Of a DNA stretch of 64,000 nucleotides, positions 20,322-55,559 are shown piece after piece. The translations under genes were made by a program, and so were the position numbers. Location: the NCBI RefSeq assembly GCF_001194135.2, contig NC_068981.1, forward strand, positions 52,830,207 to 52,894,206, given 5' to 3'. Each line of letters starts with the position of its first letter. Position 1 is the first letter of the stretch. This DNA is from Octopus bimaculoides. Taxonomy: Eukaryota. Under the pieces are notes generated by a model. The model had not been told where the DNA came from, did no database searches, and saw nothing but the letters and a program-made list of their open reading frames with translations.

Positions 20322-20397
20322 NNNNNNNNNNNNNNNNNNNNNNNNNNNNNNNNNNNNNNNNNNNNNNNNNNNNNNNNNNNNNNNNNNNNNNNNNNNN

Positions 20398-24059: not shown

Positions 24060-25385
24060 GATGTAAATGCTGGCCAGAGTACAAGATAGTAGGGAGACAT
24101 CTGACCCTTTTGAAGTCACAAATGGAGTGAAACAGGGGTGTGTTTTAGCTCCTACCCTGTTCTGTCTCATGTTCTCTGCAATGCTGACAGACGCTTTCGG
24201 AGACGCTGATGTGGGTATTGGAATCAGGTACAGATTTGATGGATCAGTTTTCAACCTCAGGAGGCTACGAGCAAAATCCAAAGTTACAACAGACACTATC
24301 AATGACTTCCTGTTTGCTGATGACTGTGCCCTAAACACTGCCTCTGAGGCGGACATGCAACGCAGTACAGACATATTCTCGGAAGCTTGTAACAACTTTG
24401 GTCTCACAATCAGTACCAAGAAGACCGAGGTGATGCACCAACCCGCTCCAGGAAAACTACATGTAGAACCCAACATTTCCATCAACGGGCAAAGATTCAA
24501 TGCGGTTGACAAATTCACCTACCTTGGCAGTACACTTTCCCACAATGTAGTCATTGATGATGAGATCAACACCAGACTCGCCAAAGCAAGTGNNNNNNNN
24601 NNACAACAGACACTATCAATGACTTCCTGTTTGCTGATGACTGTGCCCTAAACACTGCCTCTGAGGCGGACATGCAACGCAGTACAGACATATTCTCGGA
24701 AGCTTGTAACAACTTTGGTCTCACAATCAGTACCAAGAAGACCGAGGTGATGCACCAACCCGCTCCAGGAAAACTACATGTAGAACCCAACATTTCCATC
24801 AACGGGCAAAGATTCAATGCGGTTGACAAATTCNNNNNNNNNNACTACTTGGCATAAGCTGGCAGGAAAGGATACCAGACACAGAAGTCCTCACACATGC
24901 CGGGCTCCCAAGCATCCCTACCATCCTGATGAAAACTCAGCTTCACTGGGCTGGTCATGTAGCCCGCATGCCAGACTACAGAATACCCAAGAAGCTTCTG
25001 TTTGGTGAGCTCCAGCATGGCAAGCACTCCCATGGTGGCCAGAGGAAACGGTTTAAAGACAGTCTAAAGGTATCACTGAAGGCCTTCAACATTGACCCGT
25101 CATCATGGGAGCAGACAGCTTTAGATAGGACCAACTGGCGGGCCGCTGTTCACAACGGTGCTAATATGAAAGTGACAGGAAAGCTGCTGCAGAGAAGCGC
25201 AGGTAGAACAGAAAGAACAATGCTTTGAAGCCCCCGATACCTGCTACCATTCCCTGTCCCTACTGCAGCAGATCTTTCCAAGCGTGGATTGGGCTTATCA
25301 GCCATCTCTGCGCTCACCGATGATGACCTCCTCACCCTCCTCTAGGATGATCAGATGGTCCTCGTCGTTCCGACAGACGAACAAC
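24060..25385 (+). mobile_element. Young 5'-truncated RTE (BovB-like) LINE
   Basis: Open RT frame with NGVKQGCVLAPTLF, GIRYRFDGSVFNLRRL, FLFADDCAL and FTYLGS, followed by HWAGHVARMPDYRIPKKLLFGEL. GC is much higher than the flanks. Confidence 0.9.
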
Positions 25386-25890: not shown

Positions 25891-26590
25891 NNNNNNNNNN
25901 NNNNNNNNNNNNNNNNNNNNNNNNNNNNNNNNNNNNNNNNNNNNNNNNNNNNNNNNNNNNNNNNNNNNNNNNNNNNNNNNNNNNNNNNNNNNNNNNNNNN
26001 NNNNNNNNNNNNNNNNNNNNNNNNNNNNNNNNNNNNNNNNNNNNNNNNNNNNNNNNNNNNNNNNNNNNNNNNNNNNNNNNNNNNNNNNNNNNNNNNNNNN
26101 NNNNNNNNNNNNNNNNNNNNNNNNNNNNNNNNNNNNNNNNNNNNNNNNNNNNNNNNNNNNNNNNNNNNNNNNNNNNNNNNNNNNNNNNNNNNNNNNNNNN
26201 NNNNNNNNNNNNNNNNNNNNNNNNNNNNNNNNNNNNNNNNNNNNNNNNNNNNNNNNNNNNNNNNNNNNNNNNNNNNNNNNNNNNNNNNNNNNNNNNNNNN
26301 NNNNNNNNNNNNNNNNNNNNNNNNNNNNNNNNNNNNNNNNNNNNNNNNNNNNNNNNNNNNNNNNNNNNNNNNNNNNNNNNNNNNNNNNNNNNNNNNNNNN
26401 NNNNNNNNNNNNNNNNNNNNNNNNNNNNNNNNNNNNNNNNNNNNNNNNNNNNNNNNNNNNNNNNNNNNNNNNNNNNNNNNNNNNNNNNNNNNNNNNNNNN
26501 NNNNNNNNNNNNNNNNNNNNNNNNNNNNNNNNNNNNNNNNNNNNNNNNNNNNNNNNNNNNNNNNNNNNNNNNNNNNNNNNNNNNNNNNNN
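25891..26590. other. Assembly gap (700 N); smaller gaps at 20322-20397, 24593-24602 and 24834-24843
   Basis: N runs in the sequence. Confidence 0.99.
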
Positions 26591-34926: not shown

Positions 34927-35124
34927 AATTCATGGAAGGGGGAAAATATTTCTTCAATATTGTGAAGGAAGGTGACACGGTAACATTTGCTACAGAAGAT
35001 GAAACAGAGCGTACATTGTGGGTTCAAGCAATATATCGAGCTACAGGACAGACACACAAACCTGTACCTCCTGTAATGCAAACTAATAAAATTAGCAATA
35101 CTCAGATATCAAGAATGCAAGGAG
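34927..35124 (+). CDS. CADPS: CADPS exon, end of PH ([49 protein letters not shown]...MQG)
   Basis: taacag|AA and GAG|gtaagt; 198 nt, phase 1-1. Contains the LWVQA.YRATGQ.HKPVPP motif. Confidence 0.96.
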
Positions 35125-44383: not shown

Positions 44384-44507
44384 GTTCTGATGAAAGATAT
44401 AGTGACACCAGTCACTCCTGAAGAAGTTAGGAAAGTTATTAAGAAATGTTTGGAAAATGCTGCGTTAGTTAATTATACTAAGATATCTGAATATGCAAAA
44501 ATTGAAG
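44384..44507 (+). CDS. CADPS: CADPS exon ([41 protein letters not shown])
   Basis: ttttag|GTT and AAG|gtaggg; 124 nt, phase 0-1. Confidence 0.96.
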
Positions 44508-45715: not shown

Positions 45716-45733
45716 CAAATGAACGTGCTGCTG
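45716..45733 (+). CDS. CADPS: Candidate 18-nt microexon (ANERAA)
   Basis: ctaat branch-like motif at 45692, tctttacag|CA acceptor, CTG|gtatga donor; phase 1-1, open frame. TGCATG at 45784. Confidence 0.72.
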
Positions 45734-47149
45734 GTATGAAAATGTTCATATATTTGTTGTTTCTGTTTTGTGTTTAGTTTCAGTGCATGTTATTGTGATG
45801 CAGTTGTCTTTAAAATTAGAATTAAGTTGATGTCCGTGTTGTTGCTTTATATATATTTTGAAAAAAAAAGAATAAAGTTATTGTAATTTGTGGTTCATCA
45901 TCATCATCATCATTGTTTAATTTCCGCCCTCCTTGCTAGCATAGATGGGATAGTATTACAATTAATTATATCTATTATGTTTCTTAAATTCATTTATGTA
46001 ATCTTTTAATTCTTTTACTTATATCTAACAATTATAGTTATATATATATATTTAGATTCTAATTTCTGCTTGTTTAATTTGGGAACAATTATTTTCCTGT
46101 TGTAATCTATGTATTAGTTAAACTTAATATCTGTATCAACTTTATTTATCCATCTTCCTTTATTTAGATAAATGAAAACAAAAAACTGCATGAAAAGTTT
46201 ATGAAGATTGATAGATCTTATAATTTTATACTAGTTGTTTAATAATGACAAATATATATAAAACACACTAGTAAATGTAATTGGTTTCAAAATATCACTT
46301 TTCTATGATGATGGTTGTCATTTAAAACTTATGACTTAACCTTCCTGTTGACATGGAAATGTTGATGTAAAATGATGTCATTAGAACTACCAGATACATT
46401 TTAGTATTTCCTTATAACTTGTATTCAATTTAGATAACAATGGTGTCATGCTGGTGTTGAAAGAGTTGATGTAGGATGATAGTATATTATCCTTGATTAT
46501 TGTGTTAGACTTTCAATCTTTTCAGCGAGGTATCCTGATGCCAACTTTCACCTGTTTTCAAACATGAAACAGGTGAGATTTGGCATCAGGAAGTGCACCC
46601 AGTTGTAATAAACTCTGCCCCAACATAGTTTCATCAACCCATGCAAGCATGGAAAAGTAGGCATTAAGATGATGATGATGGATGATGATGTATGTATATA
46701 TGTATGTATTTGTGTTGTGATTTATCTGCATATAATCATTCTGTGTTTCTCTCCTGGTATGTGGCCTTTCTTGGATGAGAAGACTTGCTTTTGAATGTGT
46801 AATACTACCCCAGAATCTACAGATAAGATTATCTCTAGACCCTCTACTACTAAGAACATCAACAGCCTGCAAGTTTTACACATATTTCACTATTTAATGG
46901 GCAGTTTGATTTTTCTTGAATTGCAGGCTGTACTTCCTAGTTATAGAAGTACCATTTACTTCTATTCAGTGCAAGATGAATCTTAGCCGGTATACCATCA
47001 GCACCTGGTGTGTTTTTCTGATTTGACCTATTTGATGACAGTTTTGACTTCCTCTATATTAGGATTTTTACCCATTTCTTCTATATTATAGTGCTGCAGT
47101 AGATCTTTTATGACATTCTCATATGTTATGGATAGATTGTAGAAAAGAA

Positions 47150-47819: not shown

Positions 47820-48670
47820 AAAATTCAATATCATTTTTAATTCTCTTTACAATTAATGAATTGTTTTCCCTCTGAACAATGTTGCAACGATTTGAAAAGG
47901 TGACAGCTAGATGGAGCATGGTCAGGAGAATAAAGAGGATGAAGCAAAAGTTTCATAATTAGTGCCATAAACATTTCCTGAGTGAATTGAGTAATATGTA
48001 GTCTACATGTGAACAACATCCCTTAATGTTTGACCAATAATGGGAGTATTTTCTGCAAATTTTTGTGCAATGCTTCCAATTCATGACAATATTTGTCTTT
48101 ATTAACTGTTTTATTTTGGTTTAACACTTTATGGATAAACAACAACCTTCATAACCCTATCAAACACAGAGCATAATGTTTTGGGGTGTAGTCTTGGTTT
48201 GAGAATGGATTCTCCTTTTTCATTGGATACTATCCAATGTTGTTTTCATTGAATATGATTGTTTTCACCCCTTCTGATGATTCTATCCAGGAAAAGTTTG
48301 GTAGCAAGTCTACACTTCAGTGACACTCAGAAGACAATTCTTTGGTTAAACTGAGAAGCAGTCAGATGTTGATTGATCCACAGACCAAGTCGAGACACTT
48401 TCTCTGTTTGTGAAGGTGCCTTATGATCAAAGTGTGTCTTGAATTGAACTGTTTTGCTAATTTTTGTGCAGTTTGCTTTGGATTTTCCTCAATTACGGTT
48501 TTCAGAACCTGAATATTGACAGAATTGGTCATCCAGAATGAGGGAAATCTGTGAGAGAAAAATTTCCTGAGCAAAACTGGCCAAACCATCACTGGTTTGT
48601 CTGGACACTTAAAACTTCATTCCCACAGGCAGTATGAATATTTCTTATTGTTTCTATTGCTGACGAACCC
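47820..48670 (-). mobile_element. Degenerate mariner transposase
   Basis: LLHPLYSPDHAPS..HLFKSLQ (YSPDLAP motif) and LKTVIEENPKQTAQKLAKQFN...IIRHLH (HTH region). Confidence 0.78.
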
Positions 48671-49031
48671 CTTTTGAATTCATATAGCATGTGGTGTCTA
48701 ATATGAATCTGATCTAAACTCATTGAAAAGAGTAAAATCAATACACATTTAACCATTCTGGTAAAAAGTAATCTGCTAAGAAAGAATAATACATTAGAAT
48801 GTAAAAATTAATGCATATTTTACCATAAATATTGGAAATGTTCTCTCAAAGTGATCATGTCAATAAACGCAACAGGACTTTCTTTCCATTCTAATACACA
48901 CATGTACATGTATGTATATGTTTATCTATCTGTCTCTCTCTCTCTCTCTGTCCATGTGTGTGGGTGCATGTGTGCGCATGTATATACACACACATATATG
49001 AATGTGTTGTGTTTGTATATATATATGTATT

Positions 49032-53034: not shown

Positions 53035-53329
53035 GCTGGAAGGATAGCAGTTGATCTTGATAGATTTGAACTGGGAAAAGAAAGGTACATAGCTAAATAT
53101 TGCAAGACATTTTGTCTGATACTGTACTGTTTCTGCTATAATAGAATACAAATATATTCAATTAATTAAACAAAATTTAAAGAAATATTTTTGAAAATTA
53201 AATATGTTCAATTTATATGCTTTTATTTTTTATAATTTATATTTCTAATACATATTTATTCATTAACAATTTCTTATTGTTGTATGATATTAATCTTTTA
53301 ACATTAGAATTCCCCCTTTTTTACTCCAG

Positions 53330-53362
53330 CTGCTGCCGCTGCTGCAGGGCTTGTTTCAGGTG
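53330..53362 (+). CDS. CADPS: Candidate 33-nt microexon (AAAAAGLVSG)
   Basis: tcccccttttttactccag|CT acceptor and GTG|gtaggt donor; phase 1-1, open frame, GC-rich relative to flanks. TGCATG at 53411 and 53570. Confidence 0.7.
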
Positions 53363-55559
53363 GTAGGTGCTACAAACTTATGCACTCTTCTGTTCACATA
53401 CTTTAATTTTTGCATGATATTTTGGTGGTATTGAATAGATGTGTAATCTTTTCTCTTTCTTCTATTATTTTGCACCTCAGTTACATTTCACAAAATATCT
53501 CATTTATATATTTTATATTTGTAGTAATTGAAGTATGAGTGTGTTTATGTATGCTTACATGTGTGTGTGTGCATGTTATTTATACATATCAACCAGTAGT
53601 ATAACATAATATGATCTTGATTCAATACTTTAAAAAAGCTCTTAATTTAATCAAGAACTTTTTAAGAACAAATTTTATGCAGAAATAAAGGTTCCAGTCA
53701 TAATGGAGTTAACAAAGTCAGTTTAGTTTATCATAGCTCTAGTTTAATTTGGTTTTCTGTGGACTTAAAAATGTTTAATATATATATAACAATAAGTTAT
53801 ATTTTCCTTATGTCGTTACTTAAAAATCAGTATATTTAAAAGGCAATTTCTTTTGCCAAATTTTGGGAAGTAATATTTTCTTTAGCATGTCATTAAAATT
53901 AGATTGACTTAAAATATTATCATAATTAATATTTACAACTTCTAAATTTGTTTGACAGTATCAATATGAAATTGTCTTTTTATATCAAGGCTGATTAAGG
54001 CTACTCAATAATAATAATGTGCATGCCCATACAATTCTCTATTCTTATCACTTTATTTAAATACTTTAGATTTATTCTTTAAAATATTATTTCAAAAAAT
54101 CTTTCTCTGCTTATGTTTTCAAATTACTTCATGTGTGTATGTGTGTGTGTGTGTGTGTATAAGAGAGAGAGAGTAAGAGAGAGAGAGTAAGAGAGAGTTA
54201 GAGTACATATTTTTCAAATGTGTAAATCATAAGAAATACTTCCAATTACCAGTCACTTTCCTTAATTAACTCAAAATCATTTGCTCTTACCTATCGCATT
54301 GATACTCTACATCATATCTGATCCTTTGGATTTTGTTGTTTAATCAAGAGCCTCAACCAAATTTTTTTGCTCTCCAAAATAACTTCCTTGAAGATGTCAA
54401 GATCTTTAATTTCTCTTGTTCTCCTAACTCATTACACAGGTACATCTGATGTGGGAACTCAGATCTTTATCATTAAAAAATTTGCCAACTAATCTTTTCT
54501 CCACTTTTTATATTTACAATTCTTCTCCTTAATCCTACTAACTCTTGATTCCTTTCTCATTTCAAAATTTACCTATATTTCTATACATCTAAGTTTCCTT
54601 TCAGTTATTCATTTGACCTCTTTCTCATAACCACCACTTACATAAGAGCCAAATAAACCCATCTGCACCTTGAATTTGCCTGCTGATAGTCTGCACCTTA
54701 GAAATTACCTTTACCATAAATAAGATGAAAGAAAACCCTGTTTGATATACATATTATTGGCTTATCATTTCCACATGCTGAGCTTCTAATCTGATGGTTG
54801 TAAATGATCACTTTCCTTACTAACTTAAAGCTGTTTCCCTCCTCATTGACTGCAAGTATATTTCTACAGAACAATATTAAATGGAGCACTTCTGTCTTAC
54901 ATCATATATTAGTGTTCTTTCATCTTTGAAAACTCAAGGTTGCTCAGTTTATTCATAATGTTAATTTTTTTAGTTCTACAGTAACGCGATTTAACGCCAT
55001 TATTTTCACATCTCTCTGAAATGTAAGAGCTTATTACATTAGGTAAATCATGTACATCATCAAAGGATTTTTTCATTGCAGGTTTAACCCTGATGCTTCT
55101 TAAATTAGACTTATAACTACTTTAACAAGATTCATTGTTGTTGTTTGTAGCCTCATTATGTGCCCATTTCAATTGGTACATGTTTAGGACTGATTTAGTC
55201 TACACAAACCAAATTTCTAATCCAATTCATTGTAATGAAAGCAATTTTGATTCCAATTTTTAAAGTTTGCAATTGCTAGTGTTGAACTATTATTTTCTTT
55301 TGTGTGTTCATCAATGAATCTGATATCCCATCAACTCAAAGGACTTTGTTATCTGAGCATGAAGAACAGTGTGATAGTTGAATATTTATTGAGGTAAAAA
55401 TGACTTCAAATTTTTCTCTCTGTTGGGAGAGTGTATTTGACACCATTTTAATTGTTTGCACCATATTTTGTGCAATTCAAAATTTTTGACATGCAAGTAA
55501 AAAGAAAAATGGAAATTACCATGGCACCTGCTTTAGGATACAGTGCTTTCTTTCAAGAA

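What the first reader, a model, noticed from the sequence alone, without database searches (positions are those of the whole stretch)
53330..53362. Poly-alanine microexon with several frame-preserving splice choices
Seen: a strong acceptor and tandem donors 3 nt apart (after 53359, gtggta; after 53362, gtaggt). There is an internal ctgcag acceptor at 53347. The options give 33, 30, 15 or 12 nt, all phase 1-1. With the 18-nt microexon this could make a combinatorial Ala/Gly linker (KIE-ANERAA-AAAAAGLVSG) of tunable length before the MUN region. The next constitutive exon lies beyond 64000, more than 19 kb from 44507.
Basis: partly seen in the sequence, partly recalled or inferred. Interest (0 to 1): 0.7.

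Follow-up and report, generated by a model that had tools for sequence, protein, structure and literature searches.

The report
Annotated octopus CAPS alternative microexon

Summary
The sequence is exactly as described. The window carries the CAPS/CADPS gene of an Octopus species on the + strand. Splicing 13 constitutive exons, the 18-nt exon (45716-45733) and the 33-nt exon (53330-53362) gives 557 residues. These are an exact substring of RefSeq CAPS1 isoforms of O. sinensis (XP_036356657.1) and O. bimaculoides.

The visible RefSeq isoforms show all four combinations after ...EYAKIE: neither insert, ANERAA only, AAAAAAGLVSG only, or both. Argonauta hians has the identical insert. So the microexon and its combinatorial use with the 18-nt exon are supported, and both are already in public annotation.

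The tandem upstream donor (after 53359) and the internal acceptor (53347) are not supported:
- No visible isoform uses them.
- Ten constructed variants are absent from the protein collection.
- They score 2.2 and -8.0 bits, against 6.6-11.7 and 5.0-18.6 for the gene's constitutive sites.

The same junction is a known alternative-splicing hotspot. It holds mouse Cadps exon 16a and a vertebrate 18-nt exon, and it lies immediately before the crystallised SNARE-binding DAMH domain.

AlphaFold2 predicts, at modest confidence, that the alanines extend the preceding helix and that GLVSG forms a flexible linker. This is an ordinary finding of low novelty.

The parts
44384..44507 (+). Constitutive CAPS exon encoding [41 protein letters not shown]. 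It ends in phase 1 (a G is carried over), with donor gtaggg.
   Evidence: tblastn gives 100% identity to O. sinensis CAPS1 X5 residues 577-617.
45716..45733 (+). 18-nt alternative microexon, phase 1-1, encoding ANERAA. Acceptor tttacag, donor gtatga.
   Evidence: Present or absent in RefSeq isoforms. Ranks 7th of 560 candidates. An orthologous 18-nt exon AAERAA is the top candidate at L004:15525-15542 in another cephalopod-like assembly. Four codons differ synonymously and one non-synonymously.
45784..45789 (+). TGCATG (Rbfox-type motif) 51 nt downstream of the 18-nt exon.
   Evidence: No regulatory role is shown, and the motif is not conserved in L004.
53310..53329 (+). Polypyrimidine tract and acceptor AG of the 33-nt exon (ttcccccttttttactccag).
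   Evidence: 17 of 18 pyrimidines. Matrix score 5.2 bits, at the low end of the constitutive range 5.0-18.6.
53330..53362 (+). 33-nt alternative cassette exon, phase 1-1, encoding AAAAAAGLVSG.
   Evidence: An exact part of XP_036356657.1 and other O. sinensis and O. bimaculoides isoforms, and identical in Argonauta hians. Ranks first of 560 candidates. 64% G+C in 25% flanks.
53342..53347 (+). Internal ctgcag proposed as an alternative acceptor. Best read as ordinary coding sequence (Ala-Ala codons).
   Evidence: Acceptor score -8.0 bits. No isoform uses it.
53360..53365 (+). Upstream GT of the GTGGTA (GYNGYN-type) motif. No evidence that it is used as a donor.
   Evidence: Donor score 2.2 bits against 8.3 for the used donor. 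No isoform reads GLVS|E.
53363..53368 (+). The donor actually used (GTG|gtaggt).
   Evidence: Every isoform that includes the exon reads GLVSG|E. Score 8.3 bits, within the constitutive range.
53411..53416 (+). TGCATG (Rbfox-type motif) 49 nt downstream of the 33-nt exon.
   Evidence: Only 5-7% of positions have such a motif within 100 nt downstream. Both microexons have one, against 1 of 13 constitutive exons.

Best explanation
Bases 53330-53362 are a real cassette exon of the octopus CAPS/CADPS (calcium-dependent secretion activator 1) gene.

Shown:
- The exon is spliced from the acceptor at 53329/53330 to the donor at 53362/53363.
- It inserts AAAAAAGLVSG in frame between ...SEYAKIE and ESLQAEVSPKKRLED....
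- It is included or skipped independently of the 18-nt exon ANERAA at 45716-45733. A further 12-nt insert (EEQQ) lies outside the window.
- The insertion point is the same exon junction that carries alternative cassettes in vertebrate CADPS. It lies immediately N-terminal to the SNARE-binding DAMH domain.

Inferred:
- ANERAA and the alanine run lengthen the preceding alpha-helix by about three turns, and GLVSG(+EEQQ) adds a flexible hinge.
- Exon choice would therefore set the length and stiffness of the connection between the N-terminal helices of the Munc13-homology region and the DAMH domain. This could tune partner binding (SNAREs or calcium channels) in different cell types.
- Inclusion may be promoted by an Rbfox-type factor binding TGCATG about 50 nt downstream of each microexon.
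For: - Gene identity: Pfam C2_CAPS, PH and MUN on the matching protein, and hundreds of CAPS homologues.
- The 557-residue translation of my splice map, including both microexons, is an exact substring of O. sinensis X5/X2 and O. bimaculoides X4/X6.
- All four inclusion combinations appear among the 15 visible RefSeq isoforms. Argonauta hians has an identical insert.
- Best-scoring candidate exon of 560 in the intron.
- The orthologous 18-nt exon in a second cephalopod-like assembly shows mostly synonymous change.
- The same junction is alternatively spliced in vertebrates (GKKREMYEHPVFCLASQVMDLTI and NQKDAE) and in many invertebrates. Mouse exon 16a at this junction changes CaV2.2 coupling (PMC13232204).
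- PDB 6A68 (CAPS-1 DAMH) starts at the exon that follows the site.
- The AlphaFold2 model has one helix over residues 588-628, which runs through ANERAA and five alanines. Residues 629-638 are coil, and pLDDT is below 50 at 634-643.
- TGCATG lies at +51 and +49 of the two microexons, against 1 of 13 constitutive exons.
Against: - I saw no transcript reads directly. RefSeq isoforms are automated models, and only 15 of the 42 cluster members could be viewed.
- The Argonauta model may be homology-projected.
- The AlphaFold2 model is of modest quality (mean pLDDT 67, pTM 0.44), and a helix is the default prediction for poly-alanine.
- TGCATG is not present downstream of the orthologous 18-nt exon in L004.
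- Tissue specificity and any functional effect are untested.
- Conservation of the 33-nt exon outside octopods could not be tested.
Confidence: 0.85

Rival explanations
1. The exon is a multi-choice exon. The tandem donors (after 53359 and after 53362) and the internal acceptor (53347) would all be used, giving 33-, 30-, 15- and 12-nt versions at meaningful levels.
For: The motifs exist and all keep the frame. GYNGYN tandem donors are a documented class (PMC1779574). By simple counting of U1 complementarity, CAG|gtggta and GTG|gtaggt each match 6 of 9 consensus positions (my reading of the sequence).
Against: None of the 15 visible isoforms from three species uses them. Ten constructed variants are absent from the collection. 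The upstream donor scores 2.2 bits and the internal acceptor -8.0 bits, both outside the range of the gene's 13 constitutive sites. Only 1.3% of human GYNGYN donors use both sites.
Confidence: 0.07
2. The exon is splicing noise or an annotation artefact. A (GCT)n-like microsatellite next to chance splice signals would be picked up occasionally, with no function.
For: The first 16 bases are an imperfect CTG/GCT trinucleotide repeat. The intron is rich in simple repeats and transposon remnants. I saw no read-level evidence.
Against: The peptide is identical in the models of O. sinensis, O. bimaculoides and Argonauta hians. It is the top-ranked candidate of 560. The neighbouring 18-nt exon is conserved at the protein level in a more distant assembly. 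The site is a conserved alternative-splicing hotspot.
Confidence: 0.04
3. The exon is real but acts as a simple tissue switch rather than a combinatorial length tuner. In this view it is always included together with ANERAA in neurons and skipped elsewhere, and the single-insert isoforms are minor by-products.
For: Microexons of MUN-domain genes are typically switched between neuron classes (PMC12287369). Both exons share a TGCATG at about +50, which suggests co-regulation.
Against: RefSeq models of both Octopus species contain ANERAA-only and AAAAAAGLVSG-only forms. No quantitative data are available either way.
Confidence: 0.3

Closest known systems
Vertebrate CADPS/CAPS1 alternative cassettes at the exon 16|17 junction: exon 16a (69 nt, GKKREMYEHPVFCLASQVMDLTI) and the 18-nt exon (NQKDAE)
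   Same: It is the same gene family and exactly the same junction, after ...SEYAKIE in phase 1 and before the exon that begins the DAMH domain. The inserts are frame-preserving and used combinatorially.
   Different: The inserted sequences are unrelated (Ala-rich ANERAA / AAAAAAGLVSG / EEQQ in octopods). The lengths are 18, 33 and 12 nt. No function has been tested in octopus, whereas mouse e16a was reported to enhance CaV2.2 currents (PMC13232204).
Microexons of MUN-domain genes (unc-13, unc-31/Cadps) regulated between neuron types
   Same: These are small in-frame exons in a vesicle-priming MUN-domain gene. [quoted passage not shown]
   Different: The worm and mouse examples studied there are 9-nt exons at other positions. 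Their regulators (exc-7, mbl-1) and cell specificity are known, and here nothing on regulation is shown. At 33 nt this exon is above the strict 27-nt microexon limit.
GYNGYN tandem donors (for example STAT3 GTAGTT)
   Same: The donor region reads GTGGTA, which fits the GYNGYN motif. Using both GTs would add or remove one residue (Gly).
   Different: There is no evidence that both GTs are used here. The upstream GT is much the weaker site.

Membership tests
CAPS/CADPS (calcium-dependent secretion activator) gene | C2_CAPS, PH and MUN (Munc13-homology) domains in this order | tested here: met
   Pfam on the matching protein: C2_CAPS 181-280, PH 285-385, MUN 593-981. The window's exons are 100% identical to that protein.
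CAPS/CADPS (calcium-dependent secretion activator) gene | Orthology to named CAPS proteins | tested here: met
   The 557-residue translation is an exact substring of XP_036356657.1 (O. sinensis CAPS1 X5). It is 82-85% identical to the best mollusc matches and about 60-73% to most vertebrate CAPS.
Alternative cassette (micro)exon | Canonical AG...GT borders and a length divisible by 3 with an open frame | tested here: met
Alternative cassette (micro)exon | Both inclusion and skipping isoforms exist | tested here: met
   RefSeq isoforms with and without the insert in two Octopus species. These are models, not reads.
Alternative cassette (micro)exon | Length within the microexon definition (27 nt or less strict; 51 nt or less broad) | tested here: inconclusive
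   33 nt fails the strict limit and meets the broad one. The 18-nt neighbour meets both.
Neural microexon programme | Neural-specific inclusion and dependence on a neural splicing factor (Srrm/eMIC, Rbfox and others) | not testable with these tools
   No expression data are available. The only hint is TGCATG at +49 and +51. There is no TGC within the 80 nt upstream of either acceptor, by inspection of the printed sequences.
Alternatively used GYNGYN tandem donor | GYNGYN motif at the exon-intron border | tested here: met
   GTGGTA at 53360-53365.
Alternatively used GYNGYN tandem donor | Transcripts or isoforms that use both GY positions | tested here: not met
   Only GLVSG|E is seen in the 15 isoforms. 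Six constructed GLVS|E isoforms are absent from the collection. The test is limited, since no reads were examined.

The most novel reading that the evidence does not exclude
Octopods would have evolved their own set of three tiny inserts (ANERAA, AAAAAAGLVSG, EEQQ) at the junction where vertebrates placed exon 16a. The inserts would be co-regulated by an Rbfox-type factor through TGCATG at about +50. Together they would form a graded helix-plus-hinge spacer in front of the SNARE-binding DAMH domain. That spacer would set CAPS coupling to SNAREs or calcium channels in particular neuron classes. This would be a convergent solution in an independently evolved complex nervous system.
Probability: 0.15. 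Interest if true: 0.45.

Novelty: already known. Interest (0 to 1): 0.15.

Why it matters
On its own it matters little. The exon is already in the RefSeq isoform models, and cassette microexons in vesicle-priming MUN-domain genes are well documented. The modest point of interest is evolutionary. The junction after ...EYAKIE of CAPS carries different lineage-specific inserts in vertebrates, molluscs, spiders, nemerteans and echinoderms. In mouse, one such insert changes calcium-channel coupling. Octopus offers an independent case in which to ask whether the length and stiffness of this linker, rather than its sequence, is what matters.

Tried and rejected
- I first assumed Munc13. The exon peptide matched CAPS instead, and I used a CADPS sequence recalled from memory only as a tblastn probe to locate exons.
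- The 51-residue junction peptide search returned only single-exon genomic reading frames that run through the donor, so it gave no transcript evidence.
- The protein search tool appears to return only hits of similar length to the query. I needed a chimeric 1277-residue query (Bulinus N-terminus, window exons, Solemya C-terminus) to reach the octopus isoforms.
- The related-octopod contigs L001-L003 are too short and diverge 320 bp after the exon.
- L004 ends 1.8 kb after its 18-nt exon, so the 33-nt orthologue could not be sought.
- The Argonauta gene spans 229 kb, so no DNA was returned. The O. sinensis protein was not on record for locus look-up.
- The EEQQ insert and the N-terminal alternative exons are not in the window. 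A 6-residue match (MSRSLI) at 54394 is in the wrong place and I take it as chance.
- Ten constructed alternative-site isoforms were not found.
- Seven of eight long intronic reading frames had no Pfam match.

Full report
**Observation**

A pyrimidine-rich acceptor (ttcccccttttttactccag, 17 of 18 pyrimidines) ends at 53329. The 33 bases CTGCTGCCGCTGCTGCAGGGCTTGTTTCAGGTG follow. GT dinucleotides lie at 53360 (gtggta) and 53363 (gtaggt), and an internal ctgcag ends at 53347.

The upstream exon 44384-44507 ends ...AAA ATT GAA G|gtaggg, which is KIE in phase 1.

In phase 1 the 33-nt exon reads AAAAAAGLVSG.

**What gene this is**

I had first assumed Munc13. The peptide [10 protein letters not shown]...SEYAKIE belongs instead to CAPS/CADPS, the calcium-dependent secretion activator (unc-31 in worms).

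A tblastn probe located 13 exons on the + strand between 10028 and 44507. Spliced together with the two small exons, they give 557 residues. These are an exact substring of O. sinensis CAPS1 isoforms X5 and X2 and of O. bimaculoides X4 and X6. The window therefore comes from an Octopus species.

Pfam places C2_CAPS, PH and MUN domains on that protein. The MUN model covers residues 593-981 and the insert lies at 618-634.

**Is the exon real and alternative?**

The 90%-identity cluster around XP_036356657.1 has 42 members, of which 15 could be viewed. After ...EYAKIE these 15 show:

| Form after KIE | Isoforms |
|---|---|
| ESLQ... (no insert) | O. sinensis X15, X20; O. bimaculoides X7 |
| ANERAA + ESLQ | O. 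sinensis X9; O. bimaculoides X8 |
| AAAAAAGLVSG + ESLQ | O. sinensis X6; O. bimaculoides X3 |
| ANERAA + AAAAAAGLVSG + ESLQ | several, including Argonauta hians |
| as the row above, plus a further EEQQ (12 nt) | some O. sinensis forms |

The EEQQ sequence is not in the window.

Independent of annotation, I trained splice-site matrices on the 13 constitutive exons only. With these, 53330-53362 ranks first among 560 in-frame, stop-free AG...GT candidates in the 19.5 kb of intron, and the 18-nt exon ranks seventh. The 33-nt exon is 64% G+C in 25% flanks.

In a more distant cephalopod-like assembly (L004, ENA ERZ21867824) the upstream exon is 89% identical. By far the best candidate there is an 18-nt exon encoding AAERAA, 5.4 kb downstream. 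Four of its codons differ synonymously from octopus and one non-synonymously, while the flanks have diverged. That contig ends too early to test the 33-nt exon.

**The proposed extra splice choices**

These are not supported, for four reasons.
- Every visible isoform that includes the exon reads GLVSG|E, which corresponds to the donor after 53362.
- I built ten isoforms on O. sinensis and O. bimaculoides backbones using either the upstream donor (GLVS|E) or the internal acceptor (KIE|GLVSG, ANERAA|GLVSG). None exists in the 15-billion-protein collection. This is a weak negative, because the exact combination with the other alternative events had to be guessed.
- The upstream donor scores 2.2 bits, against 8.3 for the used donor and 6.6-11.7 for the constitutive donors. 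The internal acceptor scores -8.0, against 5.0-18.6 for the constitutive acceptors.
- GTGGTA fits the GYNGYN tandem-donor motif, but only 1.3% of such human donors use both GTs (PMC1779574).

**Context and likely mechanism**

The junction is a hotspot for alternative inserts across animals.
- Vertebrate CADPS shows KIE|ENVGRL..., KIE|ENQKDAENVGRL... (an 18-nt exon), KIE|GKKREMYEHPVFCLASQVMDLTIQNVGRL..., and both inserts together.
- Other lineages carry their own inserts at the same point: GRKKGTG (Biomphalaria), GRGKNK (chiton), GREQGKK (nemerteans), AKHGKS and DHDLSSD (Mercenaria), and GTEAAKQQQ... (spiders).
- The mouse 69-nt exon 16a at this junction is enriched in nociceptors and was reported to enhance CaV2.2 currents (PMC13232204).

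The crystallised SNARE-binding DAMH domain of CAPS-1 (PDB 6A68) begins with the exon that follows the site.

An AlphaFold2 model of isoform X5 (46-sequence alignment, mean pLDDT 67, pTM 0.44) gives one helix over residues 588-628. This helix runs through KIE, ANERAA and five alanines. It is followed by coil at 629-638, with pLDDT below 50 at 634-643, and then by the first long DAMH helix from 647.

My inference is that the inserts lengthen a helix and add a hinge in front of the DAMH domain. The confidence is modest, because a helix is the default prediction for poly-alanine.

Both microexons have TGCATG about 50 nt downstream (+51 and +49). Only 1 of 13 constitutive exons has one within 100 nt, and the background is 5-7% of positions. 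This hints at Rbfox-type control. The motif is absent downstream of the L004 orthologue, so I treat it as a lead only.

**Novelty and verdict**

The exon and its combinatorial use are already in RefSeq isoform models of two Octopus species. The kind of feature, an alternative small cassette exon in a vesicle-priming gene at a known hotspot, is well documented. A text search for octopus together with microexons and alternative splicing returned one paper, and that paper does not mention Cadps. The function is therefore apparently unstudied, but nothing here would surprise a specialist.

Noticed in passing
window 45716-45733; L004:15525-15542: The 18-nt ANERAA microexon has an orthologue (AAERAA) in a more distant cephalopod-like assembly (ENA ERZ21867824). 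Four codons differ synonymously and one non-synonymously, and the flanks have diverged. This suggests purifying selection on a 6-residue insert.
   Followed up: partly
window 45784-45789 and 53411-53416: TGCATG (Rbfox-type motif) lies 51 and 49 nt downstream of the two microexons. Only 1 of 13 constitutive exons (34927-35124, at +55 and +59) has one within 100 nt. The motif is not present downstream of the L004 orthologue.
   Followed up: partly
protein level, junction after window 44507: The junction after ...EYAKIE carries different lineage-specific inserts in vertebrates, gastropods, bivalves, chiton, nemerteans, brachiopod, spiders, locust, hemichordates and echinoderms. Many begin with G followed by basic residues (GRKK, GRGK, GKKRE, GREQGKK), which may point to an old basic cassette.
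   Followed up: partly
outside the window (downstream exons of the same gene): RefSeq isoforms show further small alternative inserts: EEQQ (12 nt), LRDKSKLSPWESNYTS and KSSKKVEN after ...NEEHHAE, and RAWGSS (18 nt) after ...WDAQG.
   Followed up: no
window 48592-48807 (- strand): A reading frame matches the HTH domain of the Mos1/mariner transposase (PF17906, E = 5e-11). It is a transposon remnant in the intron between the two microexons. Seven other long intronic frames gave no Pfam match.
   Followed up: partly
window 20322-20397, 24593-24602, 24834-24843, 25891-26590: Runs of N (assembly gaps) lie within introns of the gene.
   Followed up: no
L001-L003 (Logan SRR11869384, SRR11869385, SRR11869394): Contigs from another octopod carry the upstream exon, about 82% identical over roughly 950 bp of exon plus intron. 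Similarity stops about 320 bp after the exon, perhaps because of an insertion or deletion.
   Followed up: no
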